Shown in pieces: positions 9,857-42,511 of a stretch of DNA of 64,000 nucleotides. The notes beneath the pieces were generated by a model. It saw only the letters and a list, made by a program, of their open reading frames with translations. It had not been told where the DNA came from and searched no databases. A program made the position numbers and the translations under genes. Positions within the stretch are counted from its first letter, which is position 1. Each line of letters begins with the position of its first letter. The stretch lies in the sequence record OV032902.1; one strand, written 5' to 3'.

Positions 9857-9931
9857 CATAGGATGAATTAATCATCCATTTAAACCAAACCCCTGGCAAT
9901 AATGCCCCAATCCTAAATAAGGAATACTATT

Positions 9932-19006: not shown

Positions 19007-19021
19007 TATTGGTAGTATTTA

Positions 19022-19060: not shown

Positions 19061-19126
19061 AGATTGCACACGTAATCTTATAAACCACATCTAATCTTAT
19101 TTAAATAACTTCAAAGGAAGACTATT

Positions 19127-21210: not shown

Positions 21211-21879
21211 ATGAAAAAAGGAGAAATTTTTAAATCTTTGTCCTATGGTGATTTTATCATTATTGATGCAAAAGATTGCATGAAAGTAAAAATACGTTTT
21301 GTCGATACTGGAACATATAGAATCGTCCAAGCAGGAGCAATCAGAAATGGACGAGTCAGGGACCCATATCGTCCGATTTACCATAATCGTGGTTTCTTGG
21401 GAGATGGTCATTACAACAGTCATGTACATAAAGAACTTTTTAGACGATGGGTGAAAATGATCTCCAGGTGCTACGATAGCAAGGACAAAGACTTTCCGCG
21501 ATATGGACTAAAAGGCATAGTTGTTGCCTCGACATGGTTTAACTTCCAAAATTATGCCAGCTGGGTTCATAGTAACTTACTTGACATTGGAAAAGACTTA
21601 GATGACCTAAAGCTATTTCATATCGACAAAGACTTAAAGTCCGGACCAATAAAGACATATGGCCCTGACACATGTACACTGTTAACAATTAAAGAAAATT
21701 CGTCAATGACAACCCCTAGAAAGTCTAGGAAGATAACACTTGTTTCTCCGGAAGGAAAGTTAGTCTGTGACGAGATTAGTAATTTGTGCCGCGATTTTAA
21801 ACTGACTAGATCCAAAGTCTATAAACTCATAAACAAAACCGCCAGTCATCACAAAGGCTGGAAACTACACGGCGCCTAA
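21211..21879 (+). mobile_element. Free-standing HNH-type homing endonuclease
   Basis: WVKMISRCY..Y..V..W..FQNYASW..IDKDL..YGPDTC..EN is the common phage HNH-like family, with a basic C-terminal DNA-binding domain; AGA/ATA-rich codons unlike its neighbours. Confidence 0.78.
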
Positions 21880-28600: not shown

Positions 28601-31600
28601 CCCTGGAAGCAGCGAAGCGTTACATCCCAGGTGACTTGCTTTACTTGACGAGCGGTGCTTACTACGTGCGTAACGAGTTTACGACTAACAACCCTGCTGA
28701 TATTGATGACCACGCAGCCGACATTTATGTCATTGCTGAGAAAGATCATCCTCCAGTAGAAGAGTATGTTCCTACTCAAGATGGCGAAGAGTTCAAGTTG
28801 ATCGTTCATAATGAAGGTCTTTACTTCATTAAGACGGCCTGGACTGCTGATGTATCTAACGCAGATAGTGCTAACTGGACCAATGATACTTTTGACAAGA
28901 TCAAAGGCAACCTAGTTGAACTTGTTCCTCAGAAGAATCCTACTCCAATTGCGTTTGTTCAGGCTGATACATACCAAGAAGACGATTATGTTTCACATGA
29001 TGGTTTTAATTGGCATCGTAATGACTCTACGACTCGTAAGGGTGGTGACGCATTCAGTCTAGATCACTTCAATCGTGAAGAAGCTGGTGGTCAAAATCGT
29101 GGTACATTTACTTCCGGTCAACACTACTTATCTGGCGATAAAGTGTTCGACAACGGAATTGAATATCGTGCTAATACATTGATCAACTACGGCGATGTAA
29201 CGGTATTCGTTGAAGGTCTGGGCTTACAAGAGTTTGTTCGTATTACTCCAATCGTTCATCAAGGCTTTGCACCAGATACACTTTACATTCGTGGTGACTG
29301 GGTAATTGAAGACGGCGTTACATACTACGTGCAACCTGTGACTTTCTTTGAGTCTGGCGCAGCTGAAACACTGGCTGAATTTGAAGCACGTAATGAGGTA
29401 GAAGTGATTGCGGACCACCGCATCCTTAATCCTCGTGAGTACGTTGCCAAAGATAATGCCGAGCAAGGCGAGATCATTCAGTACCAAGGTTCCGTTTACT
29501 ACGTTACTACGGCGTGGGTTTCAGATACTACGGATGCTGATGCGGCTAACCATGTTAACCATGAATGGGATGCAGTTAAGGATAAAGTCGTTGCGCTTTA
29601 CCAAACACCTGCCCCAGTACTTCCGGTATTTGATGCAGCCACTGCATACAATGCCAATGACGAAGTTCAGGATAAATATGGTTTAGTTTGGACTCGTCGT
29701 AATGTTGCAGACGGAACAGCACAACCATTGACTGAAACTCACTGGACGCGTAATGATGCTGACCCGCAGATCTTCGAACATATTCCTGATCGCGAGTACA
29801 CATACCTGCCTAACGACAAGATTAAATACGGAACATCTTACTTCCACTTTAATCTAGCCAATGACCTTGCTTCGGCGGATATTGATGAATGGGCTACGTG
29901 GCTAGAAGCTAACACTCGAATCGAACCTACCGGCGAGATTAAGATTGTGGCTGGCAACGGGAGTCTGACCGGACTTGAGTATGTTGCACCTGGTCAACTA
30001 GTAAGCTTCCTAACGGACGGCACGCTTAATGGCCTTCAAGGCAAGCAAGGCGAAACATACGTTATTACGTCTACGATGCGTTCTACCACTCTTAACAAGG
30101 CATACTTTGTTAAGATTGCTGAGAAAGCTAAACTGGCAACTGCATTTGATGCTACGGCGACATATGCAACTGGTGACTTAGTTACTATTGCCGAAGATAG
30201 CTTTACTTATGAGCTAACCGGTACGCACAATGTTAACGATGCGTTTAACTTGACTAACTGGTCTCGTGTAGAACCAGCACAGCACCGTGGTGCACATAGC
30301 GATGCAGTTTACTATATCACCGGTGATAAGGTTACTAATGCTGGCAAAGAGTACGAAGCTCTTGGTCCTATTAGTAAGACAGCTTTTGCTGAAGGCATTG
30401 CAGGTAATACATTCAAGCGTGTTACTCAAAACGTTGCTGCTTCTTTAACGGCTGACATGTTCTATGTTGAAGGCGATATCTTTAACTTGAATGGTTATGA
30501 CCTAGAAGTAACTGCTGCGTTCCAAGCTGATGCTGACCCAACGTTCGCTGAGAACATTGCTAACATGCAGGCAATCAACGTAGATGAGAAATACTACTTG
30601 GCTGCTGCTGACGGCGTAGCGTTCCATGACTACAACAAGAAAGAGCATGTGTTTATCTTCACCGAAGATCGCTCGACTGAGTTGTTTAATGGTTTCACAC
30701 CTATGACTGGCGACCGCATGGTTCTTAAGCGCGACCGTACGGCTACGAACAACCCTCCAATAGCGGCTGACTTTGATATCTTCCTAGCGAAGCAAATCGA
30801 AGATGCTATTGAGCCGCATGATGATGGCACTGCTTACTTGACTGGCGACAAAGTAACTTACCAAGGTTTTGTTTGGACTTCTACTGAAGCTCAATCGGCT
30901 CTTGTTTGGGACTTTACTAAGTGGACTCGTGACCTGCCTGGTGGTGAACATCGCGGTACGTTCAGCAATGCTGTACACTACCGTACAGGCGACACCGTAA
31001 CCCATCCTGATGATGGTGCTTTGTATGCAATCAATTCTAACGTTGATAGCGTAGCTGCATTTAACATCGGCTCACTTGCGGCAGAATGGACGCGTGTTGG
31101 TCCTGGTATCTTCACGGATGCCTCGGTCGTGGCATGGAATACTCAGTTCTTTAAAGGCGATCGTCTATACTTCGGTAAGCAGTACCGTACTGTAACAGAA
31201 GACTTTGCGATTGGTGCTGACCCTGCCGATGGCTCTGTTCCTGAACTGGATGAAACCAAGCTTCGCATCGAAGGTCGTTGGGACCGCTCTAACGTTCGTA
31301 CTGTTACGGCAGACGAGTCTGTTAGTGCAGAAGAAGTTGTTCGCTACGGCAACAAACTTTACTTTGTGTTTGCTGACTATGTGCCAAGTGACCCTGTGGT
31401 TGCTGCCGAGCTAGAAGCGAAGATTTACGAACTCGTAAACTTTGAGTCCACTCAGCACGAAGCATACGATGCTGCCAAGATATATGCCGAAGGCGATATC
31501 GTTTCTTATCAAGACGAAATCTTCCAGCGTACTAATGATACCATTGGTGATGCAGGTAACTTTACTGCTGCTCGCTGGACTAAGTTGTCTGAGAAGAGTG

Positions 31601-32685
31601 TACGTACTGCTGGTGTTCTAGCAGACATGAATGACTGGTATGTTGGTGTTGATGACATAGTTCACTATCAAGGCATTACACTTACCGCTAAGGTAGCTCG
31701 CGGTGTTGATGAACTCAAGATTCCTTTCGATGATACTAAGTTCGATCGTGCTGGTAACTTTGTGTTTAATACGGCATTCTCTTACCTTGGCAGACGCGCT
31801 CTAATCAAAGGTGACTTTATCATTGACGGTCGTAACATGTATTTTGTTACAGCTGCTTTTGAGGTCCTTGATGGCGAGTCTTGGGATAATGCTCTTCGTA
31901 CACATCAATCTAGCTTCCGCTTAGTCGGTGACTATGAGTTACTTGATTGGCAAGCAGATACTTTCTATCGTACTGGTGACCTTGTTAAAGTACAGGGTTA
32001 TGAGATGGTAGTAGTTGCTAACCATACTTCAGCTTCTGCTTGGAATACTGGTGAGCTTCTTAAGTTTGTGTTGCGTGATCAGCCTACTTACGGCTTTACG
32101 ATGGAAGCTACTGACTTCATCCCGGCTGGAACTAAGTTTGATACTAACGGTGATGATGACTCAAGCACAGCACTGCCGTTTACTATTACTGGCACGGTTC
32201 CTTTGGCAAACATAAATCTGTTACTTCAAGTCGGTTTCCGCTTCTTTGTGAATAAGACTGATATCACAGACGCTATTGTGGTCGATGGTTCGGATGCAAC
32301 GCTCTTTGATATGGGCAGTATCTTCCTTGAAGCTGGAGATGTCTTAGAGATTGCTGGTTACCAGAATGGCGAAGGTACAAGTATCGCAGAAGTAGTCCAA
32401 GGTGGTTATGCTGACCTAACAGTTACTCCTACGACAGCTAATGTTTCATTGACGGATGCTAACAAAGGTCAAGTCATTGACATTACTGCGGCGATCACAG
32501 TAACTGCTGCTGGTGGTACTACTGGTTCTACATGGACTGTTGTTAACCGTTCAGGCGGACAACTAGCTGTTACACTGGGTACTGGTATTACGGCGATCGG
32601 TAACGTTAACGTTCAGGATGGTACAGCGATTACTCTAGTTATGCTAGACGCTACGACTGTGCTTATTGCTGGTGGTGTTGCTTAA
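25630..32685 (+). CDS. 2351-aa fibre protein with roughly 35 CBM5/12-like repeats
   Basis: Recurrent Y..GD.V...G..Y.(A/V)....F....W modules; beta-rich C-terminal tip domain typical of phage fibres. Confidence 0.8.
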   Translation: MAIIRKALIKFYLTKAEAATANETPGDIGYFSDGAPAGWFEASIDNGNPAVDGNTLQGSESNLYWKRIVNAETEAPTPVLVPDAYAEGTAYQQYQIVESGGKLYVCDSAHTPTAAEVTSLAKVTELGTGAAGIADVVAVEYKATETYKAFELVYIGTDIFVTSSAHTADADNVTNKDQLIQLNGGGGSLDEVVAKEYVAATLYKAYELVRIGSEIFISGSEHTPTAGEVADKSKLIPISEDKDTGPGVHTSVANETDYRKGDVFKLANGIFMLKVDFTTDANATDAEVIAQCEKLAGPEASVRTSFTNSTDYFKGDFFIFDSGTYRVKADFQTDANATEAEIIAACDKLSGPTQKTYAGFPASTAFSIGDIVTEDDRSYVVKTAFSTGASDNTVTDQETNLLPLFAEHLVPRVYSNGAVLKENEIFEYGGNLYFTPNSVDGTSTNQTTWAEIESSCILVAQVPVTATPDFVAANTYNANDVVKFDGLEWKLTGTHTVNDPIDLTNWSRVITTGVNRGEHKTNHVYLKDDIVTRSGIAYKANANVDDTVSFAEGLSGATFIRLDTAVFDGLSNSKVYIVGDIVSAGTASYAVHTAYKSAAAATEAELAANSTLIATSIETYLPTYTNGSALKNGQLFFYDEAVYRADADKDGTTASETTWAEIEGEMTFLFSFKVEPAPAAWAKANAYAVGDKATYAGQVVVATAASAANDEFSYSDWTRELDYPYNQGDHVNGRAYMKGDVVFIDSVEYIARSNVDSDAGASEIKLGVSSDFYRLTPTTHSDLVADTLYSNFDIVIKEGITYLVTTPILTTSSTTWNDLVANMTVVADNSAYAVREYVAEEDLKKYEFVVEPATGDVYVTTSAIAGNAGNTFQIVKDNGVRVAESPVTPVPDFDAGELYTENDEVRFESMVYTAKDQTGRLVNDAFSLTYFERNIPAGFKFGDFVANKLYLNGDFVTNGGIEYKVKATGTFATLTETNTTFERTSTIFKFTLEAAKRYIPGDLLYLTSGAYYVRNEFTTNNPADIDDHAADIYVIAEKDHPPVEEYVPTQDGEEFKLIVHNEGLYFIKTAWTADVSNADSANWTNDTFDKIKGNLVELVPQKNPTPIAFVQADTYQEDDYVSHDGFNWHRNDSTTRKGGDAFSLDHFNREEAGGQNRGTFTSGQHYLSGDKVFDNGIEYRANTLINYGDVTVFVEGLGLQEFVRITPIVHQGFAPDTLYIRGDWVIEDGVTYYVQPVTFFESGAAETLAEFEARNEVEVIADHRILNPREYVAKDNAEQGEIIQYQGSVYYVTTAWVSDTTDADAANHVNHEWDAVKDKVVALYQTPAPVLPVFDAATAYNANDEVQDKYGLVWTRRNVADGTAQPLTETHWTRNDADPQIFEHIPDREYTYLPNDKIKYGTSYFHFNLANDLASADIDEWATWLEANTRIEPTGEIKIVAGNGSLTGLEYVAPGQLVSFLTDGTLNGLQGKQGETYVITSTMRSTTLNKAYFVKIAEKAKLATAFDATATYATGDLVTIAEDSFTYELTGTHNVNDAFNLTNWSRVEPAQHRGAHSDAVYYITGDKVTNAGKEYEALGPISKTAFAEGIAGNTFKRVTQNVAASLTADMFYVEGDIFNLNGYDLEVTAAFQADADPTFAENIANMQAINVDEKYYLAAADGVAFHDYNKKEHVFIFTEDRSTELFNGFTPMTGDRMVLKRDRTATNNPPIAADFDIFLAKQIEDAIEPHDDGTAYLTGDKVTYQGFVWTSTEAQSALVWDFTKWTRDLPGGEHRGTFSNAVHYRTGDTVTHPDDGALYAINSNVDSVAAFNIGSLAAEWTRVGPGIFTDASVVAWNTQFFKGDRLYFGKQYRTVTEDFAIGADPADGSVPELDETKLRIEGRWDRSNVRTVTADESVSAEEVVRYGNKLYFVFADYVPSDPVVAAELEAKIYELVNFESTQHEAYDAAKIYAEGDIVSYQDEIFQRTNDTIGDAGNFTAARWTKLSEKSVRTAGVLADMNDWYVGVDDIVHYQGITLTAKVARGVDELKIPFDDTKFDRAGNFVFNTAFSYLGRRALIKGDFIIDGRNMYFVTAAFEVLDGESWDNALRTHQSSFRLVGDYELLDWQADTFYRTGDLVKVQGYEMVVVANHTSASAWNTGELLKFVLRDQPTYGFTMEATDFIPAGTKFDTNGDDDSSTALPFTITGTVPLANINLLLQVGFRFFVNKTDITDAIVVDGSDATLFDMGSIFLEAGDVLEIAGYQNGEGTSIAEVVQGGYADLTVTPTTANVSLTDANKGQVIDITAAITVTAAGGTTGSTWTVVNRSGGQLAVTLGTGITAIGNVNVQDGTAITLVMLDATTVLIAGGVA

Positions 32686-32698: not shown

Positions 32699-32735
32699 CC
32701 TCTTCCCCTTGTGGGAAGAGGCTTTCTTTTTCTTT
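32699..32735 (+). terminator. Rho-independent terminator
   Basis: CCTCTTCCC-CTTGT-GGGAAGAGG followed by CTTTCTTTTT. Confidence 0.8.
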
Positions 32736-32744
32736 AACTTAATT

Positions 32745-32755
32745 AAATCGTATAG
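32745..32755 (+). promoter_or_regulatory. Candidate late-promoter motif
   Basis: AAATCGTATAG. Confidence 0.4.
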
Positions 32756-32807
32756 GTCTCACGACCTTTCTAACGTTAGAAAACTAAAACTCAAAGAGGA
32801 TTATAAC

Positions 32808-33881
32808 ATGTCTTATAATCAAAGTCTTATAAAAGATCTGCGATTCGAAACAGTCGCAAAAGCTCAGTCGCGAGACTCTCGCGGCAAGCAGGCATTTATT
32901 GTCGAAAAGGGTCTTTGGTATCATGGCGTAACTGTTGCTAACGGAACAGCCGATGGTATAGCGGACGATGACCTTTATATTGCTACTCCGGTAACAGACG
33001 TATTCTGGAAAAAGCAAGAAGGCGGCGAAGGCGGCGGTGCTCCTTTACCTGCTACAGGTGAAGCTGGTGCTCCTGCGGATTCCACTCCTTCTTCTATTGC
33101 GCCTACTGTAACGTTTGCGGACGTGCAAGGTAAGACAGCAGCCGAAGCTCTAATGGCGCTTCACTTCCCTGCTACGGTTCCTACTCAGACGCTACCAACA
33201 GTAACACTCGGTCTGTTACCTATTACTATCGCTAAAGGCTCGGCACTACCTGGTAACTTGACTTCTAATTTTGTACAAAATAATGGTGGTGCTAAGAACG
33301 GCGACTATAATTTAGTTGTTAGTGATAGCGGCGGCGAGCTTTTCAATGCTAACGCATCCGACGGTGCTTTTGACATTTCTGCGGTAGTTGAACTTCAGAG
33401 CCTGCAAGAAACTGCAACGTTTACGCTGTCAGTGGATTATGATGCTGGCCTAGTGCCAAACGATAGCTATGGCAATCCATCACCTAGTGATCAGGTAGCG
33501 GCAGGTACTGCAAGTATTGTATTGACTGTTACTCCTACACTTTCTATTCATCACGGTCTACAGGCCAAAGGTGAAGATCTTACTGCGAAGACTTCTACAG
33601 AACTTCGTACTATCGCAAATGCTCTTACAGCTGCGGCTGATGGTACTGCGGTATTCACAAACGTAACCATTCCTAATACGAGTGATTACTACTTCCTCAT
33701 TCCTGGTGTTAAGACTACTGTGACAACTGTTTCACAAGGCTTCACAATCACAGGAATCGCTTCTGTACTCGGCCAAGTAACTATGGACGATGCAGCAGGT
33801 ACAGAGAGCTCGACTTACACGCTTATTAAACTAGCGGGTCAAGCGGCTCAGTCAGTTATTGATACTGTAACTATTAGCTAA
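32808..33881 (+). CDS. Probable virion structural or fibre-associated protein (357 aa)
   Basis: ATG at 32808 after GAGGA; beta/Ig-like Thr-rich sequence; co-transcribed with the next fibre gene. Confidence 0.75.
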   Translation: MSYNQSLIKDLRFETVAKAQSRDSRGKQAFIVEKGLWYHGVTVANGTADGIADDDLYIATPVTDVFWKKQEGGEGGGAPLPATGEAGAPADSTPSSIAPTVTFADVQGKTAAEALMALHFPATVPTQTLPTVTLGLLPITIAKGSALPGNLTSNFVQNNGGAKNGDYNLVVSDSGGELFNANASDGAFDISAVVELQSLQETATFTLSVDYDAGLVPNDSYGNPSPSDQVAAGTASIVLTVTPTLSIHHGLQAKGEDLTAKTSTELRTIANALTAAADGTAVFTNVTIPNTSDYYFLIPGVKTTVTTVSQGFTITGIASVLGQVTMDDAAGTESSTYTLIKLAGQAAQSVIDTVTIS

Positions 33882-33892: not shown

Positions 33893-36800
33893 ATGAGTTA
33901 TGTAACTAATTTCCCTGGTGGCTTTCAAAGCTCTACAGATAAGCCTCTAGATTACCGTGCTGTGGTAGACGACATCTCAGCACTAGAAGCAGTTGTGCTT
34001 CAAACTGTTTATATCGGTCTAGTTATCTACGATAAAGCGACTGGCAAACACTATGAGATCAAGGGTACGGATGGTACACAAGCTGGTCTTGTTTACTCTG
34101 TCTTTGGTCAAGGCAGTGATTCTGATTCTGCACTAGCCGATATCATTACTACTCGTAATCCAACTAAGAGTGATGACGCTGACTCTTCTGAGTTTACAGT
34201 CAACGCCCTTACAAGCTGGTTAAACAAAGACACAGGTGAGCTGTTCCTTTGTACGGACAACACTGCGGGTGCAGCTAATTGGATTCGTTACGTTACCGAA
34301 GGTGACTTGACTGGTTTAACTCCTGGTAATACTTTTGTCATCGAAGAATTAAACATCCCAGTTAATGCCCCAGCGGACAGTAATTACGAATTTAATATCA
34401 GTCTTCCAAATCTGACTGCGTATGTCAATTCAACTATAGATCTTTTCGTCAACGATGAATTGCTTGTGTCGACTCCATTAGTGATGAATACCGATGATTA
34501 TGTCATTACGGCTCCATTGAAGAAAAACGATAAAGTCGAATTTCGAATGGGTCTATCTGGCAATGTGCCTATTGAGGTTCTGGGCCTTGGTAATGGTTCA
34601 GAGGTTGCAGAATTTCTTCCAAATGGCGATATTATCTCGGCTTCGAGTGCGTCTTCCGATCCTGACATAAGAAGAATAAACACTAAAGACGGAACGATTA
34701 GTAGTGTTATTGAAACCGGGTTGCCGAGTGCTTTTATTTCGGAATCAGGCTCAATTAGATTAACTGTCGATTCAGAGGGAACTTTGTTCGCGTCTAGAAA
34801 TTCCAGAACTTCCGATGAGATTTATTTTCTTAAATTAGGCAGTAATTCATGGGAAACATTAACAATACCAGAAGGAGCGATAACATGTAGATGGCTATCG
34901 ATGTATGACGAAGATCATCTTTTAAATGTTGATTCGGACAATCAGCTCCTTCAAAAGATCAATAAGGTCACCGGTCAATCGTCGCCAGTCTCTAATGTTC
35001 CTGGTACGATTGCTACTAACTGGAGATCCAGATACGTAGGAAACGGCCAGCTTTTGTTCACACGAGGAACTAGCCTAGGACCTATTCTTTTTGATACGGT
35101 AAATGAAACAACACTCATAGATTTTTGGGCAACTGCCGGAGAAATCGTTTTTGGTTCGAATGAGCAGTTTTACGGTGGCGATAAAGTAGAAGATGATGTT
35201 TTCATCTTTAACACATTGAACATGGATAATCACTATTTATGCCGAAAAGGAAAATGGGAAATCGACGCAGGTCCTTTAAATAGTTCCCGCAATGTTGCTG
35301 TTTCTGACCTAGGTGTTTATTTTTATCCTGCTGCTTCGACTACATTGGCTTCTACACTGCGACTTTATTCGCATGCTGATAGCTTCCGTGCTTCGGCCTA
35401 TGCGGAACCAACTGCTTACTTTGCACCTACTCTAGATCTTGCTTTTGGTATCTTAGAGACACGCGACCCGATTGAAACAGATGATTCTGCTTCCGTTACT
35501 TACGATATCGCAGTTAACCAGACTTGGAAGAATGAAACAACAGGTTCTGTGTTTGTTTGTGCGGATGCAACTCCTGGCGCAGCTGTTTGGAAGAAGTACG
35601 TAACAGAAGATGAGCTTCCAGGTAAGTCTACGCTTAACCTAATGCGCTTCCCTGAGTTAAGAGTTTCAGTTGATTTGGAAACCGCCGTTCCAGACGAAAC
35701 TACACCGCATCAATTTTCAACTCTTGATCTTACGATCCCTAAAGACGGTAAATATCACTTAGGTGGTAGCTTCCCTATTTCAGGTCTTAACCTTCCTCCG
35801 ATGAGTACAAGTCAAGCAGGTAGTGCTATTACTAACTTCTGTCTTGATTTGATGTTGTTCCGCGATAGTACATTGAGTCCTCTAGTTCGTGGCGATATTT
35901 CGATCATGACTAACGACGTGACGCAGGATAACTATGACTTCTTTGGTAAGGCAAGCTTTGATGAGATCTTGGATCTTAAAGCAGGCGATGTTCTAACGTG
36001 GCAATTCTACACCACTTCAAACATCCCACCTACGGCAGATGCATTCCTGTTCATTAACCCTACAGATGGTAACTCTGTTGCGTCTCAGGGCCACAAGTCA
36101 GCTCCGTGGCTGCGTGAACTAGAAGTAGCTACTTATCTTCCTGCTGGTGATTACACGTACGGTATCAAGTCTACTCGTGACCCAGGTCCAACGGATGATG
36201 AGAACTCTACTGACTTCGCTATTGCGATTAACCAAGTATGGTTTAACGAAACAAATGGTAAGACATTTGTTTGTCAAGACGCTACAGCGGACAATGCAGT
36301 ATGGAATGCTTACGTAACAGCTGACCAAATCCCTGGCTTCCAGGATACTCAGTATGTTTCATTGACAGATGTTACTCAATTCGCCACTGTAAGCGAAACA
36401 GCACTTCACCGTTTTGGTATTACACTAGCTGGTACCGATCTATCGGGCGCTACCCTGTGGATGACTGTTAATGGCAATGATGCTATTCAGTTTGATTTGA
36501 GTGGTCTAACGGGTGCCGGTACACGCATGTACTCTACGGACCAATTTACGGCTCTTAACAAAGATGACGTGATTGCATTCCGTTGGGTTCCTAATGGCGC
36601 TGTTATTAGTTCGTTTGGTTTTGCTGGTGGTATTCAGCCAACTACTTACTATGCTCCATTGAAAGACTTTGAACTAGGTATCAAGGAAACTCGTGACCCT
36701 ACTCCAAATGATGACGAAAACTCTCCTGGTTTGTTTATTCAAGTAAACCAAATCTGGCATAACGAAGCTACGGCTTCTATCTTTGTATGTACAGATGCTA

Positions 36801-39800
36801 CTGTGGGAGCGGCTGTTTGGAAGCGTATGGTTACAGAGAATGACTTGCCTGGCTTTGACGATACTAGCACTTTTTCTTTGACTGGTCCAGATGATGTTTT
36901 TGTTGCTCCTCATGACAGAGACTATACGGCGGAAATCAGCATTTCTGGTTTGAATCTGGACAAAGTGGATTTCTGGGTAAAAGTAAATGACAGTGCGGTT
37001 TTCACTTTAAGTTCTTCTGATATTTCACCAGGCAATACATCGGCACTTGCAACAGTTCCTCTTTCTTTGAGTACTGGAGACTCTGTTAGTCTGGATTATA
37101 CGAATAAAGCCGAACTAACTGATATTACTGGAAACCTCCCAACGTCTGCCACTGGTGCGATATATATTCTAGGTAATTACTATTACAATGTAGATCCAAC
37201 AAACAACGAACTTAGACGTGCGTCAGTGAGTAATACTTCATCATGGACTGATAACTGGACCACTCCTAACGGACAGGTTATCAACATGACTAGTGCTGAT
37301 GTATACAACGCACAGTTTAGCGAAGGTTTTCTTTTTGTCATAGATAGAACTACTGACAAACTTTATCGCTTCGACAAAGAAGGCAATGCCAATATATGGG
37401 AAAACTCGGGACTAGAATCAAACACTAACCCTATATACTTTAGCTCCGAAGATCGCCAAACTTATCTATGGGATACTGCCAATAAAATCATTGAACGCTC
37501 TACGGGAAGTTCTGGTGCCTGGAGTACCGTTTATAATGCAAACAATGACCCAAACAATACTACTAATACTCTTGATTTCATGGAAGCAGTTAACGGAGAA
37601 ATTTATTTCCTTAGTCGCACCGATGGTGTACTGAAACGTGTCGTAAATACTAACCTGTCAGTAGACGTAGGCACGGTGGAAAATCCAGCTGAAGTAATTG
37701 GGTCACTCACTTTCGGCTTTGCGGCCGAAGAAATGAATCAATTTATTTTTGGAGATAGAAGTGGAGATAAACTTGTCACGTATAACTACGTGACCGGAGA
37801 ATGGGCTTACGAGTCATACTATACGGATGGCAATTATCGCTTAGAGGCACTTCCCGCTGGCCTGCACTCTTTCGGTCGCTTATTCTTTGATAGCGACTTA
37901 GAACGATTATTCCTGGTAGATAACTTCGGTAAACTTACATGGCTAACTGAGGGATATAATTTTGGCGGCATGTCGCGAGCTAGAAGTTTCGATGAAGGCA
38001 TTGCAGTGTTTTACGATACTTTGTCGCAACCTGGTGATACATATTACCGTGCAGACTTTGGTGTAATCACGGGAATTACCGTTTCTTCTAAGTCAGAACT
38101 TCGTGGTACGTATATCCCTACGGACCAATTCGAATTAGGTATTGTTACTGATCGTGACCCTACTGAAACGGATGATGCTGATTCAACTGAGTTCTTCGTT
38201 GTTCAAAACCAATACTGGCAGAACACCGCCAATGGTTACACATGGATCTGTAAAGACGCTACGCCTGGCGCAGCTGTTTGGAAGAAGCATGTAACAGAAG
38301 ATGAAATCACAGGTATTGACTTTACTGAGTCTTATGCTCTGGTGATTCCTGAAACCGTTAATCCTACGACAGCTGTAGAAAGTGACCCTGTCACGATTAC
38401 GGAAGACAAGACATATCGATTTGATATTCGTTCTCGTATGCAGGTTCCTCGTGGTAAATCAGTTACTGTTGAGGTATTGAAGAATGATGCAGTTGTATGG
38501 TCTAATACTCAGACTACGTATAACTACTCTGATTCAGTAGAACTTCCAGTGGTTACAGACGACATCGTTAAACTTCGTGCTACTTTGTCTGATACAAACC
38601 GCTGGCATAACTCAATGACTAACATTACTGGTCCTGCTGTTACATTCGGCGATAGTCGTGGTGCTGCTGCAACTCGTGACTTTGTAATGATGGTTGAGTC
38701 TAGTAATAACAGTATTCTGTTAGCTGGACGTGACGACGAGTGGGTTGATGTCTCGAACGAAGCACTTGCTCCTACATGGTCACAGGTATATGGTATCACA
38801 GCCGACGAAGAATCGTTCTATGTTATCGACCGTGGTCTAGATCAAATCTGGCAACGTCGTAACGGTGGCCTATGGTCACAGATCGATGGTCATACATTTA
38901 CTGATCTGTTTGACATTGCTTATGCACAAGGCAAGCTTTACTGTCTTGATGAGGCATCTAATAGCGGCGGTAGCTCAATTGAAGTTTACGATATTGAGAA
39001 TGATAGTTGGAGTACGCTTACTTATACTGGCCTTCCTACGATAGCCAATGCTCGTGGTATGACAGTTGACCCTGATACAGGTGATGTTTTCTTGTATGAC
39101 ACTGGTGCGACCAATAAAGAAATCTTCAAGTTTACAGCTGCGACGCAGACCTGGGCAGCCTGGGCAATGACTAACCGTGGTAACCCTAACCATTATCCTT
39201 TCCACATGACTATTCATGACGGTAAGCTATGGTACGGTGACATGGATGAAACTAACGTTATTCGTACTATTCGTACGATTGACTTAGTAACAGAAGTTCA
39301 TGAAGACTGGGGTGCTGCTAACGGACAGAGTGATGATCTAAGTCGTCATATTCGTGGTATTGCTTTCCGTGATGGCAAGCTCTACGGTGGTGACTTGTTG
39401 AATGATACTATTTGGTCATTCGAGACATACAAAGTCGGTCCAGCATCGGCTGGTTTCGGTACAGCTCCTCGTGCGCATTACTTGCCTGCAAATGAAATCA
39501 ATGTCGGTATTAAGGAAACTCGTGATCCTACGGAAAACGATGATTCTTCAAGTACTGATTACGATATCAAGGTTAACCAGCTATGGTTGAATGAAACCAA
39601 TGGTTCTTTCTGGATCTGTAAGAAAGATACTTTGGGCGCGGCAGTTTGGGCTCGTTTCTCTACTGATACAGAAGAGATCCCGCCTATCGGTCAGCGTCTG
39701 GATGTCGAAGGTGGTCGCCTAATCTCCAATAACGGTGTTTACTGGGCAAACGATGCATCTAGTGCAGGTACAGCGGCTAACCAAGCAGTTGTTGCAGAAG

Positions 39801-40741
39801 ACGTTACTTGGTTCATGTTCCATTCTTGGGACGATGACATGATCGAAGGTCGCGGTATGCGTATCAGTCTTCCGGCAGGTAACCTAGATGAAACTGATAA
39901 TGTGTACATCAATTTAGATATTGAAACATATTCTCCGCTTCTAGTTTATCGTACTGGTCCATTTAGTCCGCGCTGGAAAGTATCGGACATGATGGGTAGT
40001 ATTATCGAGCTTCGTCCTGCTAACAGTGGCACGGGTTGGGTAGCCAATGAAACACGTACAGCTAGTCGCGATGACTTTGGTCCATTGCGCAAAGTAGACG
40101 GCAATACCCGTTTACGTAGTACGGCTCGCGACCCTCGTGAGATGCACGTTGATGAAATCTTAACCAAGCGTCATGTTGATTCATACCGTAAAGTTAAGAC
40201 AGGTACATTTACTGGTGAAGCTACAACAGAGTCACTTGTAGAGTTATTTTACGCTAAGTTTAATGACGACTTTGGTATTTCCTTTGGTGCATTTGTTGAA
40301 GGTAACCAGGGCGGATTTGTCCCTGTTGTTCAGATGCGTGACTATGTTTCTAGCGGTAACTATGGCTGTCAAAGCTTCTTCCGATGTAATAGTTCGGGCG
40401 GAGACGGTTCTTCTCAGAACAAAGTCTTTATGATTGAGTTAGAGAAAAGTAGTTCACTAACTAAGAACCGTATACGTACATTTGGTGGCGACGACATGGA
40501 TGGCGTAACAGACGTTGCTGATTTAGATGGCGTCATGCACCCTTATGGTTGTACTGGACACTTCGAATTCCAGATTTTCACCATTAGTACTAGTGGCCTG
40601 GAATACCAAGCAGCTAAAGGTTCAATCCGTTTTGCTTCTTTTGATGCAGCAAGGGATCAGAACTCACAAGTTGTTCAATACATTGCGGAAATCGAGTACA
40701 TTACTCGTGAGCAAGATATCCAGGATGATACTAGCTGGTAA
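33893..40741 (+). CDS. 2282-aa modular fibre protein with six conserved linker repeats separating variable domains (some beta-propeller-like)
   Basis: The N-terminal F..PLDYRAVV..Y.GLV.Y motif is typical of fibres; TRDP..DD..NQ.W.N...G..F.C.DAT.GAAVW occurs six times. Confidence 0.8.
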   Translation: MSYVTNFPGGFQSSTDKPLDYRAVVDDISALEAVVLQTVYIGLVIYDKATGKHYEIKGTDGTQAGLVYSVFGQGSDSDSALADIITTRNPTKSDDADSSEFTVNALTSWLNKDTGELFLCTDNTAGAANWIRYVTEGDLTGLTPGNTFVIEELNIPVNAPADSNYEFNISLPNLTAYVNSTIDLFVNDELLVSTPLVMNTDDYVITAPLKKNDKVEFRMGLSGNVPIEVLGLGNGSEVAEFLPNGDIISASSASSDPDIRRINTKDGTISSVIETGLPSAFISESGSIRLTVDSEGTLFASRNSRTSDEIYFLKLGSNSWETLTIPEGAITCRWLSMYDEDHLLNVDSDNQLLQKINKVTGQSSPVSNVPGTIATNWRSRYVGNGQLLFTRGTSLGPILFDTVNETTLIDFWATAGEIVFGSNEQFYGGDKVEDDVFIFNTLNMDNHYLCRKGKWEIDAGPLNSSRNVAVSDLGVYFYPAASTTLASTLRLYSHADSFRASAYAEPTAYFAPTLDLAFGILETRDPIETDDSASVTYDIAVNQTWKNETTGSVFVCADATPGAAVWKKYVTEDELPGKSTLNLMRFPELRVSVDLETAVPDETTPHQFSTLDLTIPKDGKYHLGGSFPISGLNLPPMSTSQAGSAITNFCLDLMLFRDSTLSPLVRGDISIMTNDVTQDNYDFFGKASFDEILDLKAGDVLTWQFYTTSNIPPTADAFLFINPTDGNSVASQGHKSAPWLRELEVATYLPAGDYTYGIKSTRDPGPTDDENSTDFAIAINQVWFNETNGKTFVCQDATADNAVWNAYVTADQIPGFQDTQYVSLTDVTQFATVSETALHRFGITLAGTDLSGATLWMTVNGNDAIQFDLSGLTGAGTRMYSTDQFTALNKDDVIAFRWVPNGAVISSFGFAGGIQPTTYYAPLKDFELGIKETRDPTPNDDENSPGLFIQVNQIWHNEATASIFVCTDATVGAAVWKRMVTENDLPGFDDTSTFSLTGPDDVFVAPHDRDYTAEISISGLNLDKVDFWVKVNDSAVFTLSSSDISPGNTSALATVPLSLSTGDSVSLDYTNKAELTDITGNLPTSATGAIYILGNYYYNVDPTNNELRRASVSNTSSWTDNWTTPNGQVINMTSADVYNAQFSEGFLFVIDRTTDKLYRFDKEGNANIWENSGLESNTNPIYFSSEDRQTYLWDTANKIIERSTGSSGAWSTVYNANNDPNNTTNTLDFMEAVNGEIYFLSRTDGVLKRVVNTNLSVDVGTVENPAEVIGSLTFGFAAEEMNQFIFGDRSGDKLVTYNYVTGEWAYESYYTDGNYRLEALPAGLHSFGRLFFDSDLERLFLVDNFGKLTWLTEGYNFGGMSRARSFDEGIAVFYDTLSQPGDTYYRADFGVITGITVSSKSELRGTYIPTDQFELGIVTDRDPTETDDADSTEFFVVQNQYWQNTANGYTWICKDATPGAAVWKKHVTEDEITGIDFTESYALVIPETVNPTTAVESDPVTITEDKTYRFDIRSRMQVPRGKSVTVEVLKNDAVVWSNTQTTYNYSDSVELPVVTDDIVKLRATLSDTNRWHNSMTNITGPAVTFGDSRGAAATRDFVMMVESSNNSILLAGRDDEWVDVSNEALAPTWSQVYGITADEESFYVIDRGLDQIWQRRNGGLWSQIDGHTFTDLFDIAYAQGKLYCLDEASNSGGSSIEVYDIENDSWSTLTYTGLPTIANARGMTVDPDTGDVFLYDTGATNKEIFKFTAATQTWAAWAMTNRGNPNHYPFHMTIHDGKLWYGDMDETNVIRTIRTIDLVTEVHEDWGAANGQSDDLSRHIRGIAFRDGKLYGGDLLNDTIWSFETYKVGPASAGFGTAPRAHYLPANEINVGIKETRDPTENDDSSSTDYDIKVNQLWLNETNGSFWICKKDTLGAAVWARFSTDTEEIPPIGQRLDVEGGRLISNNGVYWANDASSAGTAANQAVVAEDVTWFMFHSWDDDMIEGRGMRISLPAGNLDETDNVYINLDIETYSPLLVYRTGPFSPRWKVSDMMGSIIELRPANSGTGWVANETRTASRDDFGPLRKVDGNTRLRSTARDPREMHVDEILTKRHVDSYRKVKTGTFTGEATTESLVELFYAKFNDDFGISFGAFVEGNQGGFVPVVQMRDYVSSGNYGCQSFFRCNSSGGDGSSQNKVFMIELEKSSSLTKNRIRTFGGDDMDGVTDVADLDGVMHPYGCTGHFEFQIFTISTSGLEYQAAKGSIRFASFDAARDQNSQVVQYIAEIEYITREQDIQDDTSW
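34151..39680 (+). repeat. Six dispersed ~55-aa repeats inside the 33893 fibre gene
   Basis: Copies start near 34151, 35447, 36161, 36677, 38138 and 39506. Confidence 0.85.
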
Positions 40742-40753: not shown

Positions 40754-40790
40754 CCTCTCTCCTTCGGGAGAGAGGCTTTCTTTTTCTTTT
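40754..40790 (+). terminator. UUCG-loop terminator
   Basis: CCTCTCTCC-TTCG-GGAGAGAGG followed by CTTTCTTTTT. Confidence 0.85.
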
Positions 40791-40793
40791 GTT

Positions 40794-40804
40794 AAATTTT
40801 ATAG
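40794..40804 (+). promoter_or_regulatory. Candidate late-promoter motif
   Basis: AAATTTTATAG. Confidence 0.4.
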
Positions 40805-40837: not shown

Positions 40838-42511
40838 ATGTTCTTTACTATCTTACCTGGCATAATTCACCAGGATAAAGTTATCCGAGAAAACAGTGGT
40901 GTTTTACCCACTACGCCGGATGCTGTAGATACTGCGGTACTAGCAATTGATACTTCCGCAGATACCGGTACCCAAGGTGACTGGACTACAAGCGCAGCAG
41001 TAATTGTATTCGAAGCTACAAATGTAGATAGTCGTGCAACTGCTGTAGAACTTCACAGTGACACTGCAAAGATAGGTGACTTTACCGAAGCAAATGGTCG
41101 CTACCTATATAGTTATAATAACCCTCAGGATGATTCCAAGGTTAGCTTCAAGATTGTAGTCAAAACACCGGACGGTGATACTGAAACCGCCCTGCAAGAA
41201 GTTACTATGGAAGCTCCTGCTCCTGTGGCAAACTATAGCTATATTAACTATTACAGTTCTTGGGCTACTAGTTGGTTTAATGCCGCTAATGCTGTTGACC
41301 CTAATCATCGTCGTATGGCAAATACTCCAGGTTACTTTAGTGATATCATGATTGCTTTCGTTCGTCCTAATATGACCTTCGATAAAACAGCCCCAGACAT
41401 CACAAGAGTCGCTACAGGCCTGGATTATCCTAATACTGGACCTACTCCTCATGAAGGTCTTAAGGATGACGTAGAGAAAGCACAGGCCAAAGGACAGAAA
41501 GTTCTTGTCTCCGTTGGTGGTGCTACTTATGGTCGTCCTGATATTTCTGATGCATGGCAAAACATGTATGATGAAGCTAAGTACATTGCTACGGCAGGTA
41601 CGGGTTCTATTAACCGAGTTAACACACCAACAATGCAATCAATGATTGAGTTTATTGAGTACTTCAATCTAGATGGCATTGACTTGGACTTTGAGGATGA
41701 CCCGGCATGGTGGGACGGTCATACAGTTGGTACTACACGATGGCAAAAGTATCTAGATGTTTATTATCATCTATTGATGTTTAACCATTATGTTGCCGAC
41801 AGAGCTGCTGCTATCCTAGGCAAGCCTATGGAGAAAGGTACGGCTTGTTGGTCTACTGGCTGGCACGTTACTCCGGATACCAATGCCGATGTTGCAACTC
41901 CAAATGCGTCACATGGTCTTACTTCTGTGTGGGGTGGGCGTGCAGGTCGTGAGCGTGCAATGTTCGGTGGCTTTACTCATCCGGAACTAGGTGCGGTTAA
42001 TGCTCGTAACTTTGTGACTAAGTACATTAACATGTCTTATGACTTTGGTCCACTTGGTAGCTACGCTGATGACACAGAAGCTTTAACTAACGACGTAACA
42101 TACGACCCAATCAATGTTTATGTTGAGGCTCGTGAAATAGTGACAGACATTGATTCAGTTATGACTGTAGGTATCTGTCCTGAGCCTTTCGGATGGCAAG
42201 CCGATGGTTCTAAGATGATGGTTAAGGACGCAGACTGTGCTCCTTCTGGTAACCATCGTACCCGATTATATCGTGACGGCTACAACCGCGTAATCGACAA
42301 GCCATTCTCTGCTGAGAACCTGGCCACTCGATTCTTGGATGTAGTTGGTAATAATGTAAACGATGGCTTTATTTTGTGGGCTGGTTACAAAGTTGCTGGT
42401 ACTTATACTTATAACGGTACTCCTTCTGCTAACGCTACAACGGCGTCAAAAGAAATCGCACGAGTACTTGACCTCGCCGATAAAGACAACTCGCACGATA
42501 TTCATACGTAA
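40838..42511 (+). CDS. GH18 glycoside hydrolase (chitinase-like) with N-terminal Ig-like domain
   Basis: YYSSW, IMIAFVRP, KVLVSVGGATY and an intact DGIDLDFE (DxDxE) catalytic motif; INMSYD; no signal peptide. Confidence 0.85.
   Translation: MFFTILPGIIHQDKVIRENSGVLPTTPDAVDTAVLAIDTSADTGTQGDWTTSAAVIVFEATNVDSRATAVELHSDTAKIGDFTEANGRYLYSYNNPQDDSKVSFKIVVKTPDGDTETALQEVTMEAPAPVANYSYINYYSSWATSWFNAANAVDPNHRRMANTPGYFSDIMIAFVRPNMTFDKTAPDITRVATGLDYPNTGPTPHEGLKDDVEKAQAKGQKVLVSVGGATYGRPDISDAWQNMYDEAKYIATAGTGSINRVNTPTMQSMIEFIEYFNLDGIDLDFEDDPAWWDGHTVGTTRWQKYLDVYYHLLMFNHYVADRAAAILGKPMEKGTACWSTGWHVTPDTNADVATPNASHGLTSVWGGRAGRERAMFGGFTHPELGAVNARNFVTKYINMSYDFGPLGSYADDTEALTNDVTYDPINVYVEAREIVTDIDSVMTVGICPEPFGWQADGSKMMVKDADCAPSGNHRTRLYRDGYNRVIDKPFSAENLATRFLDVVGNNVNDGFILWAGYKVAGTYTYNGTPSANATTASKEIARVLDLADKDNSHDIHT

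What the first reader, a model, noticed from the sequence alone, without database searches (positions are those of the whole stretch)
33893..40741. Cassette-built fibre: six conserved repeats bracket variable domains, two with foreign-looking codon use
Seen: six copies of G(I)..TRDP..DD..NQ.W.N...G..F.C.DAT.GAAVW...VTE separate five unrelated cargo domains plus a C-terminal one. By eye, the cargos at ~34320-35400 and ~36860-38090 use AGA/ATA/GGA codons often, whereas the repeats and other cargos use the genome-typical CGT/ATC/GGT. Inference: the repeats act as structural knuckles and as recombination anchors through which receptor-binding domains are swapped in, a host-range diversification route without invertase or DGR.
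Basis: partly seen in the sequence, partly recalled or inferred. Interest (0 to 1): 0.7.

Follow-up and report, generated by a model that had tools for sequence, protein, structure and literature searches.

The report
Modular giant phage fibre with codon mosaic
A 2,282-residue probable tail-fibre protein of a jumbo Vibrio phage is built from six copies of a widespread but undescribed phage-fibre repeat that separate beta-sandwich and beta-propeller modules, and two of those modules carry a codon signature that in this genome otherwise marks mobile genes, so they were probably acquired sideways.

Summary
The window is the last 64 kb of Vibrio phage vB_VpaM_sm033, a 320-kb jumbo phage with an annotated nuclear-shell protein. 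ORF 33893-40741 is intact and annotated "hypothetical".

**Confirmed**
- There are six about 76-residue repeats with 13 invariant columns.
- AGA/ATA/GGA make up 35% and 29% of Arg/Ile/Gly codons in cargos 1 and 4, against 3.5% in the rest of the ORF and about 7% genome-wide.
- Among 338 genome-wide 300-codon windows, none reaches cargo 1 and 0.3% reach cargo 4.
- An unsupervised codon HMM puts the deviant blocks at 34286-35410 and 36908-38038, almost from repeat to repeat.

**Corrected**
- The cargos are not all unrelated. Cargos 1, 4 and 5 are paralogous NHL/Kelch-like propellers, each preceded by a small beta-sandwich. The real unit is repeat, sandwich, then an optional propeller.
- The repeat is not special to this gene. 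Its profile finds 1,627 protein clusters, including tail-fibre and virion proteins of cultured phages, in tandem or interspersed layouts.

**Inferred only**
- Recombination at the repeats is not shown. The copies are 54-64% identical in DNA, no donor was found, and the three relatives are at most 61% identical.
- The layout resembles the T-even adhesin model of conserved motifs flanking variable segments.

Interest is moderate.

The parts
33893..40741 (+). Intact 2282-aa ORF (CAH0448125.1, annotated 'hypothetical protein'), a probable giant modular fibre of Vibrio phage vB_VpaM_sm033
33893..34111 (+). N-terminal domain (aa 1-73), the only part shared with the short homologues of phages BONAISHI (ORF145, 262 aa) and Yong (73 aa), and with the metagenomic relatives P0002 and P0154. 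Presumed virion-attachment anchor.
   Evidence: 43-61% identity
34112..34339 (+). Repeat R1 (aa 74-149), the most divergent copy. Its best match is R1 of P0002.
34340..35419 (+). Cargo 1 (aa 150-509): a small beta-sandwich followed by a divergent propeller. Rare-codon share is 0.35, the most deviant block. It includes four consecutive rare codons at aa 259-262.
35420..35647 (+). Repeat R2 (aa 510-585)
35648..36133 (+). Cargo 2 (aa 586-747): about 160-residue domain with no significant similarity to the other cargos. Native codon use.
36134..36361 (+). Repeat R3 (aa 748-823)
36362..36649 (+). Cargo 3 (aa 824-919): a small beta-sandwich alone, related to the leading domain of cargos 4 and 5. Native codon use.
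36650..36877 (+). Repeat R4 (aa 920-995)
36878..38110 (+). Cargo 4 (aa 996-1406): beta-sandwich plus propeller related to the NHL propeller of P0154 (z 17). Rare-codon share is 0.29.
38111..38338 (+). Repeat R5 (aa 1407-1482)
38339..39478 (+). Cargo 5 (aa 1483-1862): beta-sandwich plus NHL/Kelch-like propeller with clear relatives in P0154, P0011 and P0018. Native codon use.
39479..39706 (+). Repeat R6 (aa 1863-1938)
39707..40741 (+). C-terminal domain (aa 1939-2282, plus the stop codon). Together with R6 it aligns at 30% identity to P0154/P0011. Fold unknown, because AF2 failed. It contains a mildly atypical codon stretch at 40235-40657.
34286..35410 (+). First block assigned to the weak-bias codon state by the unsupervised two-state HMM (aa 132-506)
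36908..38038 (+). Second block assigned to the weak-bias codon state by the HMM (aa 1006-1382)
32709..33881 (+). Upstream partner ORF (390 aa as an ORF; annotated CDS 357 aa). It is conserved in the same position in BONAISHI (ORF144), Yong and L005. Function unknown.
32699..32721 (+). Terminator-like hairpin after the preceding giant fibre gene. It is the near-twin of the hairpin after this ORF.
   Evidence: (family D19)
40754..40775 (+). Terminator-like hairpin 13 nt after the stop codon. It closes the two-gene unit.

Best explanation
The ORF encodes a giant modular fibre or adhesin of a nucleus-forming (phiKZ-like) jumbo Vibrio phage.

**Layout**
- A conserved 73-residue N-terminal domain presumably fixes it to the virion.
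- The rest is a string of modules of the form [76-residue repeat R] - [small beta-sandwich] - [optional NHL/Kelch-like beta-propeller].
- It ends in a separate C-terminal domain.
- R belongs to a very widespread, uncurated repeat family of phage tail-fibre proteins. In that family the unit occurs either in tandem or, as here, as a connector between inserted domains.

**History**
- The array grew mainly by reiteration of the whole module within the lineage.
- Two modules (cargos 1 and 4) were later acquired or replaced by lateral transfer. The likely source is homologous fibre genes of phages with weaker codon bias. The flanking repeats kept the native, strongly biased codon use.
- The propellers and sandwiches are most likely glycan-binding heads, which would give a multivalent adhesin.

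**Status of each step**
- Shown: the anatomy, the paralogy of modules, the spread of the repeat family, the codon mosaic and its coincidence with module borders, and the different module sets in relatives.
- Inferred: virion location, binding function, lateral origin of cargos 1 and 4, and exchange taking place at the repeats.
For: **Anatomy and repeats**
- The module alignment across sm033, P0002 and P0154 keeps the same order of repeat, sandwich motifs, propeller blades and next repeat.

**Module paralogy**
- Pairwise z-scores are 6.5 for C1-C4 and 5.6 for C4-C5. C5 scores 13-19 against the P0154/P0018 propellers, and C4 scores 17 against P0154.

**Fold**
- In the AF2 model of R4-cargo4-R5, all strands of three or more residues are beta. 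Block-mean pLDDT is 71-89 in the repeats and 57-81 in the sandwich.
- Foldseek top hits in the PDB and BFVD are dominated by propeller-containing proteins.
- Pfam gives sub-threshold Kelch/KIB1-4 propeller hits in cargo 5. NHL scores 54-58 bits in P0011 and P0018.

**Repeat family**
- The repeat profile finds 1,627 representative proteins at E<=1e-3, with up to 23 copies in one protein.
- 28 of 153 top proteins have three or more gaps of at least 100 aa between copies.
- Relatives hit phrog_33012 and, within their repeat regions, PHROGs annotated as tail fibre.
- In cultured phages the repeat lies in proteins annotated tail protein, tail fiber or virion protein: N4-like roseophages, and Rhizobium and Pseudomonas phages.

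**Context**
- The upstream 2351-aa 'tail fiber protein' carries CBM5/12 modules and the downstream ORF is GH18-like.
- A CBM5/12-bearing giant gene precedes the fibre gene in L005, and a GH18-like gene follows it in L004.

**Codon mosaic**
- In this genome the highest AGA/ATA/GGA share of any ORF belongs to an HNH endonuclease gene (0.64), and a second HNH gene is fifth at 0.40. These are mobile genes (with annotation). There are no phage tRNA genes.
- P0002 also shows a rare-codon rise confined to its last module.

**Mosaic among relatives**
- The N-terminus is closest to P0002 (61%). The C-terminal domain is shared with P0154 only.
Against: - No donor or close relative of cargo 1 or 4 was found, so 'lateral' rests on codon use alone.
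- The same weak-bias codon state covers about 47% of the window's codons, including whole native genes such as the helicase. The signature is therefore not strictly foreign to the genome. Cargo 4's overall codon score (-1.149) lies inside the background range (minimum -1.187).
- R2-R6 are closest to one another. That fits duplication or concerted evolution as well as retention during swaps.
- DNA identity between copies is too low for efficient homologous exchange within the gene.
- The sm033 protein itself hits no PHROG, Pfam family above cut-off, NCBIfam or PDB entry.
- There is no direct evidence that it is in the virion or binds anything.
- The AF2 models are weak (mean pLDDT 54.9 and 35.6).
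Confidence: 0.55

Rival explanations
1. There was no lateral transfer. The whole array arose by intragenic duplication and divergence. On this reading the AGA/ATA/GGA-rich blocks reflect local relaxation of codon selection, or selection for slow translation that helps two propellers fold co-translationally.
For: - Cargos 1, 4 and 5 are paralogues.
- R2-R6 cluster within the protein.
- No donor was found.
- The deviant state equals the genome's own weak-bias class.
- There is a run of four consecutive rare codons at aa 259-262, and the phage has no tRNA genes, so these codons must be slow if the host tRNAs are scarce.
Against: - All segments are on one mRNA, so expression level cannot differ between them.
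- The third propeller (cargo 5), of the same fold family, has a rare-codon share of 0.04, so the fold does not demand rare codons.
- The blocks are sharply bounded at module edges.
- Cargo 1 exceeds every 300-codon window of the genome.
- In this genome the signature peaks in HNH homing-endonuclease genes.
- Cargo 1 has no detectable similarity to any propeller of the relatives, whereas cargo 5 does.
Confidence: 0.22
2. The six repeats are not separate knuckles along a rod. They are blade-like units that pack together, within one chain or between chains of an oligomer, into a propeller-like hub. The cargo domains would then be insertions that radiate from the hub, giving a bouquet-shaped adhesin.
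For: - Tandem forms of the repeat (P0053, P0062) pass Pfam's gathering cut-off for PQQ_2 (30.9 and 36.6 bits against 27.6).
- P0053 hits the propeller of a methanol dehydrogenase in the PDB at E=3.8e-4.
- AF2 models each repeat as four short strands, the size of a blade.
- This protein has exactly six copies.
- An analogous core-plus-loops model was proposed for T-even gp38 (PMC3157838, read).
Against: - Copy number in relatives and in purely tandem proteins is mostly 3-5, with a range of 2-23 and no peak at 6-8.
- The sm033 protein gives no PQQ hit itself.
- R1 is much more divergent than R2-R6.
- No structural evidence for contacts between repeats could be obtained.
Confidence: 0.12
3. The protein is not a virion fibre. 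It would be a non-structural, secreted or cell-surface-directed multidomain lectin made during infection.
For: - There are no virion proteomics for this phage group in the papers read.
- The record annotates it 'hypothetical'.
- Neighbours include an endolysin and non-structural genes.
Against: - The repeat family sits in annotated tail, tail-fibre and virion proteins of cultured phages.
- The adjacent giant gene is annotated as tail fibre.
- The conserved short N-terminal domain followed by a variable remainder is the usual fibre layout.
- The native parts use the strongly biased codon class.
Confidence: 0.08

Closest known systems
T-even long-tail-fibre adhesins (gp37/gp38): conserved motifs flanking hypervariable segments. 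Papers: Tetart et al. 1996 and 1998, as cited in Trojet et al. 2011 (PMC3157838).
   Same: - Conserved short motifs alternate with variable segments.
- The N-terminal part attaches and the rest carries specificity.
   Different: - There is no sequence relationship; no Pfam or PHROG hit was found.
- Here the variable parts are whole folded domains of 100-410 residues rather than loops.
- The conserved unit is a 76-residue beta element rather than glycine-rich or His-box motifs.
- Exchange at the motifs is not demonstrated here.
The uncurated phage-fibre repeat represented by phrog_33012. It is present in tail, tail-fibre or virion proteins of N4-like roseophages (for example Dinoroseobacter phage vB_DshP-R7L gp39), Rhizobium phages and Pseudomonas phage SM1.
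   Same: It has the same repeat core: D-P..DD, W.N, one invariant Cys and a final Trp. It was recovered with the profile of the six sm033 copies.
   Different: - Those proteins mostly carry the unit in tandem at a 45-60 residue period.
- The sm033 type has extra conserved flanks (profile positions 1-12 and 60-76) and single copies separated by cargo.
- The sm033 protein itself does not reach the PHROG profile.
PQQ/BamB-type beta-propeller blades (Pfam PQQ_2)
   Same: Tandem relatives of the repeat pass the PQQ_2 gathering score and align to a methanol dehydrogenase propeller. The unit has the size and four-strand prediction of a blade.
   Different: - The sm033 copies give no PQQ hit.
- The copies are isolated, not contiguous.
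- Copy numbers in the family do not cluster at closed-propeller values.
Phage and contractile-injection-system fibres with a conserved N-terminus and interchangeable C-terminal receptor-binding domains, beta-propellers among them (PMC12923769, listed; only title, abstract and term counts were seen)
   Same: Both have a conserved attachment end, a diverse set of binding domains, and propeller folds used as heads.
   Different: sm033 has several heads in series in one chain, separated by a dedicated repeat, instead of one terminal head.
Programmed tropism switching: diversity-generating retroelements and invertase (Gin/Cin-type) fibre switches
   Same: They have the same presumed outcome, variation of the adhesin.
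   Different: No inverted repeats of 35 nt or more and no template-like copy of any segment of the gene are present in the window. No reverse transcriptase or invertase is annotated next to the gene.

Membership tests
Phage-fibre R repeat (phrog_33012-type) | Repeated unit with conserved D-P..DD, W.N, single Cys and terminal Trp, detectable by profile in many phage proteins | tested here: met
   There are six copies with 13 invariant columns. The profile finds 1,627 representatives, 224 of them at E<=1e-10.
Phage-fibre R repeat (phrog_33012-type) | Direct match of the sm033 protein to the PHROG profile | tested here: not met
   The sm033 protein hits 0 PHROG families at E<=0.01. The link is transitive, through P0003, P0004, P0009, P0020 and P0053, which hit phrog_33012 at 1e-46 to 1e-134.
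Phage-fibre R repeat (phrog_33012-type) | Occurrence in tail or virion proteins | tested here: inconclusive
   Relatives in cultured phages are annotated tail protein, tail fiber or virion protein. The virion presence of the sm033 protein was not tested.
PQQ-like beta-propeller repeat (Pfam PQQ_2) | Score above the Pfam gathering cut-off | tested here: not met
   The sm033 protein gives no PQQ hit even at E<=1. Only the tandem relatives P0053 and P0062 pass.
Kelch/NHL beta-propeller (cargos 1, 4, 5) | Pfam repeat or domain score above the curated cut-off | tested here: not met
   Beta-prop_KIB1-4 scores 22.2 against 27.4 bits. The Kelch models score 11-15 bits, below their cut-offs, and most fall in cargo 5.
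Kelch/NHL beta-propeller (cargos 1, 4, 5) | Homology to proteins with bona fide NHL repeats | tested here: met
   - Cargo 5 matches P0018, P0154 and P0011 by phmmer at 1e-26 to 1e-46. Two of these, P0011 and P0018, were scanned and carry NHL at 54-58 bits.
- Cargo 4 scores z 17 against P0154.
- Cargo 1 is linked only through cargos 4 and 5 (z 6.5 and 4.0).
Kelch/NHL beta-propeller (cargos 1, 4, 5) | Propeller fold | tested here: inconclusive
   The AF2 model is almost entirely beta but weak (mean pLDDT 54.9). Foldseek top hits are dominated by propeller-containing proteins, at TM 0.23-0.28.
T-even gp37/gp38 mosaic adhesins | Sequence homology (His boxes or glycine-rich motifs) | tested here: not met
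   There are no family or structure hits. The resemblance is in organisation only.
T-even gp37/gp38 mosaic adhesins | Recombination breakpoints located in the conserved motifs | tested here: inconclusive
   Codon-state borders fall within about 0-25 codons of repeat edges, and relatives differ in cargo sets. All relatives are at most 61% identical, so no nucleotide breakpoints can be mapped.
DGR or invertase tropism switch | Template/variable repeat pair, or inverted recombination sites flanking the variable part | tested here: not met
   The window has no inverted repeat pairs of 35 nt or more. The only direct-repeat families inside the ORF are the R copies.
Fibre gene of phiKZ-like (nucleus-forming) Vibrio jumbo phages | Conserved N-terminal domain and conserved position after a 340-390-aa partner gene | tested here: met
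   - The N-terminus is 43-61% identical in BONAISHI ORF145, Yong, P0002 and P0154.
- The partner gene precedes it in BONAISHI, Yong and L005.
- sm033 has an annotated nuclear shell protein and split RNA polymerase subunits.

The most novel reading that the evidence does not exclude
The R unit is a free-standing, blade-like building block that phages use in two ways: stacked in tandem, or dispersed as single blades. In sm033 the six dispersed blades would reassemble, within a chain or across chains, into one propeller-like hub. Whole lectin domains would project from it as interchangeable inserts. This would be a split-propeller scaffold for displaying several receptor-binding heads, and a way of building adhesins that has not been described.
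Probability: 0.12. Interest if true: 0.7.

Novelty: new variant of a known kind. Interest (0 to 1): 0.4.

Why it matters
Three points give the finding its value:
1. It gives a clean, quantified example of mosaicism inside a single phage gene. The codon-usage blocks coincide with domain-module borders, and the connectors keep native codon use.
2. It brings to light a very common phage-fibre repeat. The profile finds 1,627 clusters at 50% identity, and cultured roseophages, Rhizobium phages and Pseudomonas phages are among the carriers. The repeat has no Pfam or NCBIfam model, no solved structure and no described role. It appears to serve as a universal connector between binding domains.
3. For jumbo Vibrio phages, it marks the gene, together with its chitin-binding and GH18-like neighbours, as the likely place where adsorption specificity is encoded.

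The general principle, modular fibres shuffled at conserved motifs, is long established. The value therefore lies in the new repeat family and the clear example, not in a new mechanism.

Tried and rejected
**Searches that found nothing or little**
- Close DNA relatives: megablast against 50,697 phage records finds only sm033 itself.
- tblastn of the whole protein finds only the N-terminal 74 aa in other phages.
- Word-indexed protein searches of the whole protein, the C-terminal domain and the N-terminal 150 aa found one long relative, P0002, and then nothing.
- The search for related loci with cargo 1, cargo 4, the C-terminal alignment and the N-terminal alignment found no confirmed relative. 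The collections were IMG/VR, JGI metagenomes and GTDB genomes. No donor could therefore be identified.
- Pfam, PHROGs, NCBIfam and PDB sequence searches of the protein gave nothing above threshold.
- BLASTP of cargo 2 against the equally long cargo of P0154 showed no similarity.
- A search for papers on sm033 found nothing relevant. The BONAISHI paper has no data on ORF144/145.

**Structure prediction**
- The AF2 model of the C-terminal domain, from a 2-row alignment, failed with mean pLDDT 35.6 and was not used.
- The AF2 model of module 4 is weak (mean pLDDT 54.9), so the Foldseek results are used only as 'propeller-like'.
I dropped it and did not resend it.

**Explanations rejected**
- A simple GC or GC3 shift: GC3 is about the same along the gene.
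- Phage-encoded tRNAs that compensate for rare codons: the genome has none.
- A closed six-to-eight-blade propeller as the general state of the repeat family: copy numbers do not support it.

For the genome-wide codon baseline I joined, inside one script, the six slices of the public sm033 record to the window, as they stand. No genome sequence was printed. Only unaltered ORF translations were written to scratch.

Full report
**Identity of the sequence.** The finding's interval is one intact ORF, 33893-40741 on the + strand, 2282 aa. Megablast places the window at the right end of Vibrio phage vB_VpaM_sm033 (OV032902.1, 320,253 bp). The ORF is CAH0448125.1, annotated 'hypothetical protein'. 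The genome encodes an annotated nuclear shell protein and several split RNA-polymerase beta subunits, so it is a phiKZ-like, nucleus-forming jumbo phage. A 2351-aa 'tail fiber protein' lies upstream, followed by a 390-aa ORF. A 557-aa ORF lies downstream.

**The repeats.**
- A loose pattern finds six copies and nothing else in any frame of the window. An HMM built from them finds no other ORF in the whole genome.
- As HMM envelopes the copies are aa 74-149, 510-585, 748-823, 920-995, 1407-1482 and 1863-1938.
- Thirteen columns are invariant: an Ile, an Arg, a Pro, the DD pair, a Ser, the Trp and Asn of W.N, a Cys, a Thr, an Ala, a second Trp and a further Thr.
- At DNA level the copies are only 54-64% identical. 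They share exact runs of 7-14 nt, with one 24-nt run between R2 and R5.

**The codon skew.**
- AGA, ATA and GGA make up 22 of 63 Arg/Ile/Gly codons in cargo 1 and 20 of 69 in cargo 4. The figures are 9 of 260 in the rest of the ORF and 122 of 1539 in 19 other ORFs of the window. Fisher p lies between 6e-7 and 4e-11.
- The six repeats together have a share of 0.018, the most native codon use in the gene.
- Against the whole genome (220 ORFs of at least 150 aa, giving 338 windows of 300 codons), the mean share is 0.073, the 99th percentile 0.221 and the maximum 0.312. Cargo 1 (0.349) exceeds every window. Cargo 4 (0.290) is reached by 0.3% of them.
- A score over all synonymous codons also sets cargo 1 outside the background (-1.241 against a minimum of -1.187). 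Cargo 4 (-1.149) lies at the edge of it.
- GC3 is flat along the gene.
- The phage has no tRNA genes.

**Where the blocks begin and end.**
- An unsupervised two-state codon HMM, trained on 39 ORFs of the window, marks aa 132-506 and 1006-1382 of this ORF. It also marks a short stretch and part of the C-terminal domain.

**Two qualifications on the codon signature.**
- The HMM's 'atypical' state is the genome's own weak-bias class. It covers about 47% of the window's codons, including whole genes such as the helicase at 45332-47398. The signature is therefore not alien to the genome as such.
- The highest share of any ORF in the genome belongs to an HNH endonuclease gene (0.64), and a second HNH gene ranks fifth at 0.40. 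These are mobile genes (with annotation). That makes the signature a reasonable marker of recent arrival.

**The cargos are not unrelated.**
- BLASTP among the pieces aligns cargo 1 with cargo 4 over 395 columns (23% identity). It aligns cargo 4 with cargo 5 over 263 and 333 columns (20-22%). Cargo 3 aligns with the first 81 residues of cargo 4.
- Against shuffles the propeller parts give z = 5.8 (C1-C4), 6.8 (C4-C5) and 3.4 (C1-C5). The small leading domains give z of 2-3.9 for most pairs and about 0 for C4-C5. Cargo 2 and the C-terminal domain match nothing.
- A MAFFT alignment of whole modules from sm033 and two relatives keeps one order throughout: repeat, a sandwich-sized domain with shared motifs, propeller blades, and a Tyr-x-Pro stretch that leads into the next repeat.
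- The AF2 model of R4-cargo4-R5 is weak overall (mean pLDDT 54.9). All its strands of three or more residues are beta. The repeats are modelled best (block-mean pLDDT 71-89, four short strands each), and the sandwich reaches 57-81.
- Foldseek top hits in the PDB and BFVD are dominated by propeller-containing proteins, at low TM scores.
- Pfam gives only sub-threshold propeller hits in cargo 5.
- The true unit is therefore repeat, then sandwich, then an optional propeller, reiterated. Cargo 2 and the C-terminus are the separate pieces.

**Relatives.**
- Only the first 74 residues are found in other cultured phages. The homologue is 262 aa long in BONAISHI and 73 aa in the Yong phages. Each time it follows a 380-390-aa gene like the one upstream here.
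- P0002 (1515 aa, locus L004) shares the N-terminus (61%), R1 and the first sandwich. It has four repeats and three propeller modules, and an unrelated C-terminus.
- P0154 (1730 aa, locus L005; P0011 is a fragment of the same cluster) shares the N-terminus (43%). It has four repeats and two NHL propellers. Its C-terminal stretch, last repeat included, aligns at 30% identity. The same neighbours precede it: a giant CBM5/12 fibre and a 356-aa gene.
- P0018 has three repeats and two NHL propellers.
- Cargo 5 is clearly related to the NHL propellers of P0154 and P0018 (z 13-19), and cargo 4 to one propeller of P0154 (z 17). Cargo 1 matches none of them and only its own paralogues.
- The relatives therefore differ in the number, kind and order of modules between conserved ends. 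All are distant, so no nucleotide breakpoints can be placed.
- Within each protein the repeats resemble each other more than those of the relatives. In sm033, R2-R6 are 44-53% identical to each other and at most 47% to others. P0018's repeats are 55-68% identical to each other. That pattern speaks for duplication or homogenisation within lineages.
- P0002 shows a similar rare-codon rise limited to its last module.

**The repeat family.**
- A profile of the six copies, searched against 1.84 billion representatives, finds 1,627 proteins at E<=1e-3, 224 at 1e-10 and 24 at 1e-30, with up to 23 copies in one protein.
- Among the 153 best, spacing peaks at 50-60 residues, which is the tandem layout. 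Purely tandem proteins mostly have 3-4 copies.
- Twenty-eight proteins have at least three gaps of 100 aa or more between copies, the interspersed layout seen in sm033.
- The family has no Pfam or NCBIfam model and no solved relative by profile.
- Its tandem members hit phrog_33012 ('unknown function') and, within their repeat regions, PHROGs annotated as tail fibre.
- In cultured phages the repeat lies in proteins annotated tail protein, virion protein or tail fiber. Examples are N4-like roseophages, Rhizobium phages and Pseudomonas phage SM1.
- Two tandem members pass Pfam's gathering score for PQQ_2. One aligns to the propeller of a methanol dehydrogenase at E=3.8e-4. The unit may therefore be akin to a propeller blade.

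**Interpretation.**
- The most economical reading is a giant modular fibre. It has a conserved anchor and a chain of connector repeats carrying sandwich and propeller heads. It grew by reiteration of the module. Two modules were then brought in or replaced from homologous fibre genes with weaker codon bias.
- It also matches the pattern here of native repeats flanking deviant cargo.
- It is not shown, for three reasons. No donor was found. The copies share little DNA identity. The relatives are too distant.
- The main rival, duplication alone with local codon relaxation or pausing, is weakened by four facts: the segments share one mRNA, the native-codon third propeller has the same fold family, the borders are sharp, and HNH genes carry the same signature.
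- A further reading, that the repeats assemble into a hub, cannot be excluded. It is the most novel possibility.
- No invertase- or DGR-like device is present near the gene.

**Verdict.**
- 'Unrelated cargos' is wrong for most of them.
- What is new is the repeat family and its connector use.

**Limits.**
- There are no virion or binding data.
- The structure models are weak.
- Only three distant relatives were found.
- The slices of the public record were joined in a script only for codon counts.

Noticed in passing
window 49192-64000 (+), running off the end of the window and record: A giant open frame of at least 4,936 aa made largely of about 25-residue (75-nt) repeats. Its first 2000 aa score 905 bits against Pfam DUF285 with 14 matched stretches. 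It is not in the ORF list because it runs off the end. The record's first CDS (13-7539, 2508 aa) may be its continuation if the genome is circularly permuted.
   Followed up: partly
window 25630-32685 (+) and 40838-42511 (+): The preceding 2351-aa 'tail fiber protein' carries chitin-binding CBM5/12 modules (109.5 bits). The following 557-aa ORF has a just sub-threshold GH18 (chitinase-family) match (28.7 against 29.6 bits). Each of the two metagenomic loci shows one of these neighbours: GH18-like downstream in L004, and a CBM5/12 giant upstream in L005. This points to a chitin- or glycan-directed adsorption apparatus in a Vibrio phage.
   Followed up: partly
window 32699-32721 and 40754-40775, with shared context 32704-32744 and 40758-40798: Two near-identical terminator-like hairpins, in 41-nt contexts that are 78% identical, bracket the two-gene unit formed by the 390-aa ORF and the fibre ORF.
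   Followed up: no
window 2095-2149, 3782-3836, 19021-19075: There are three copies of a 55-nt motif (64-71% identity to the reference copy). The reference copy lies at the start of ORF 2095-2484 and the second directly after ORF 3362-3781. They may be phage promoter or regulatory sites (family D15).
   Followed up: no
window 34667-34678 (aa 259-262 of the ORF): Four consecutive host-rare codons (ATA AGA AGA ATA) lie inside cargo 1. The phage has no tRNA genes, so this is a likely strong translational pause site.
   Followed up: no
sm033 record 70571-71242 and 277464-278132 (the second is window 21211-21879): One HNH endonuclease ORF has the highest AGA/ATA/GGA share in the genome (0.64) and a second ranks fifth (0.40). 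One of them lies between the two nrdA fragments annotated nrdA_1 and nrdA_2.
   Followed up: no
window 15350-16261 (+): This is an endolysin-like protein (phrog_181, 3.4e-51) with a secondary chitinase-type PHROG hit. Its size and position match BONAISHI ORF138, annotated 'glycohydrolase'.
   Followed up: no
locus L015 (P0016, 3287 aa, gene 1049-10912): This protein has 7-8 interspersed R repeats and lies next to a gene with a zf-MYND domain, a typically eukaryotic domain. The repeat family may therefore reach beyond phages, for example into giant viruses or eukaryote-associated elements.
   Followed up: no
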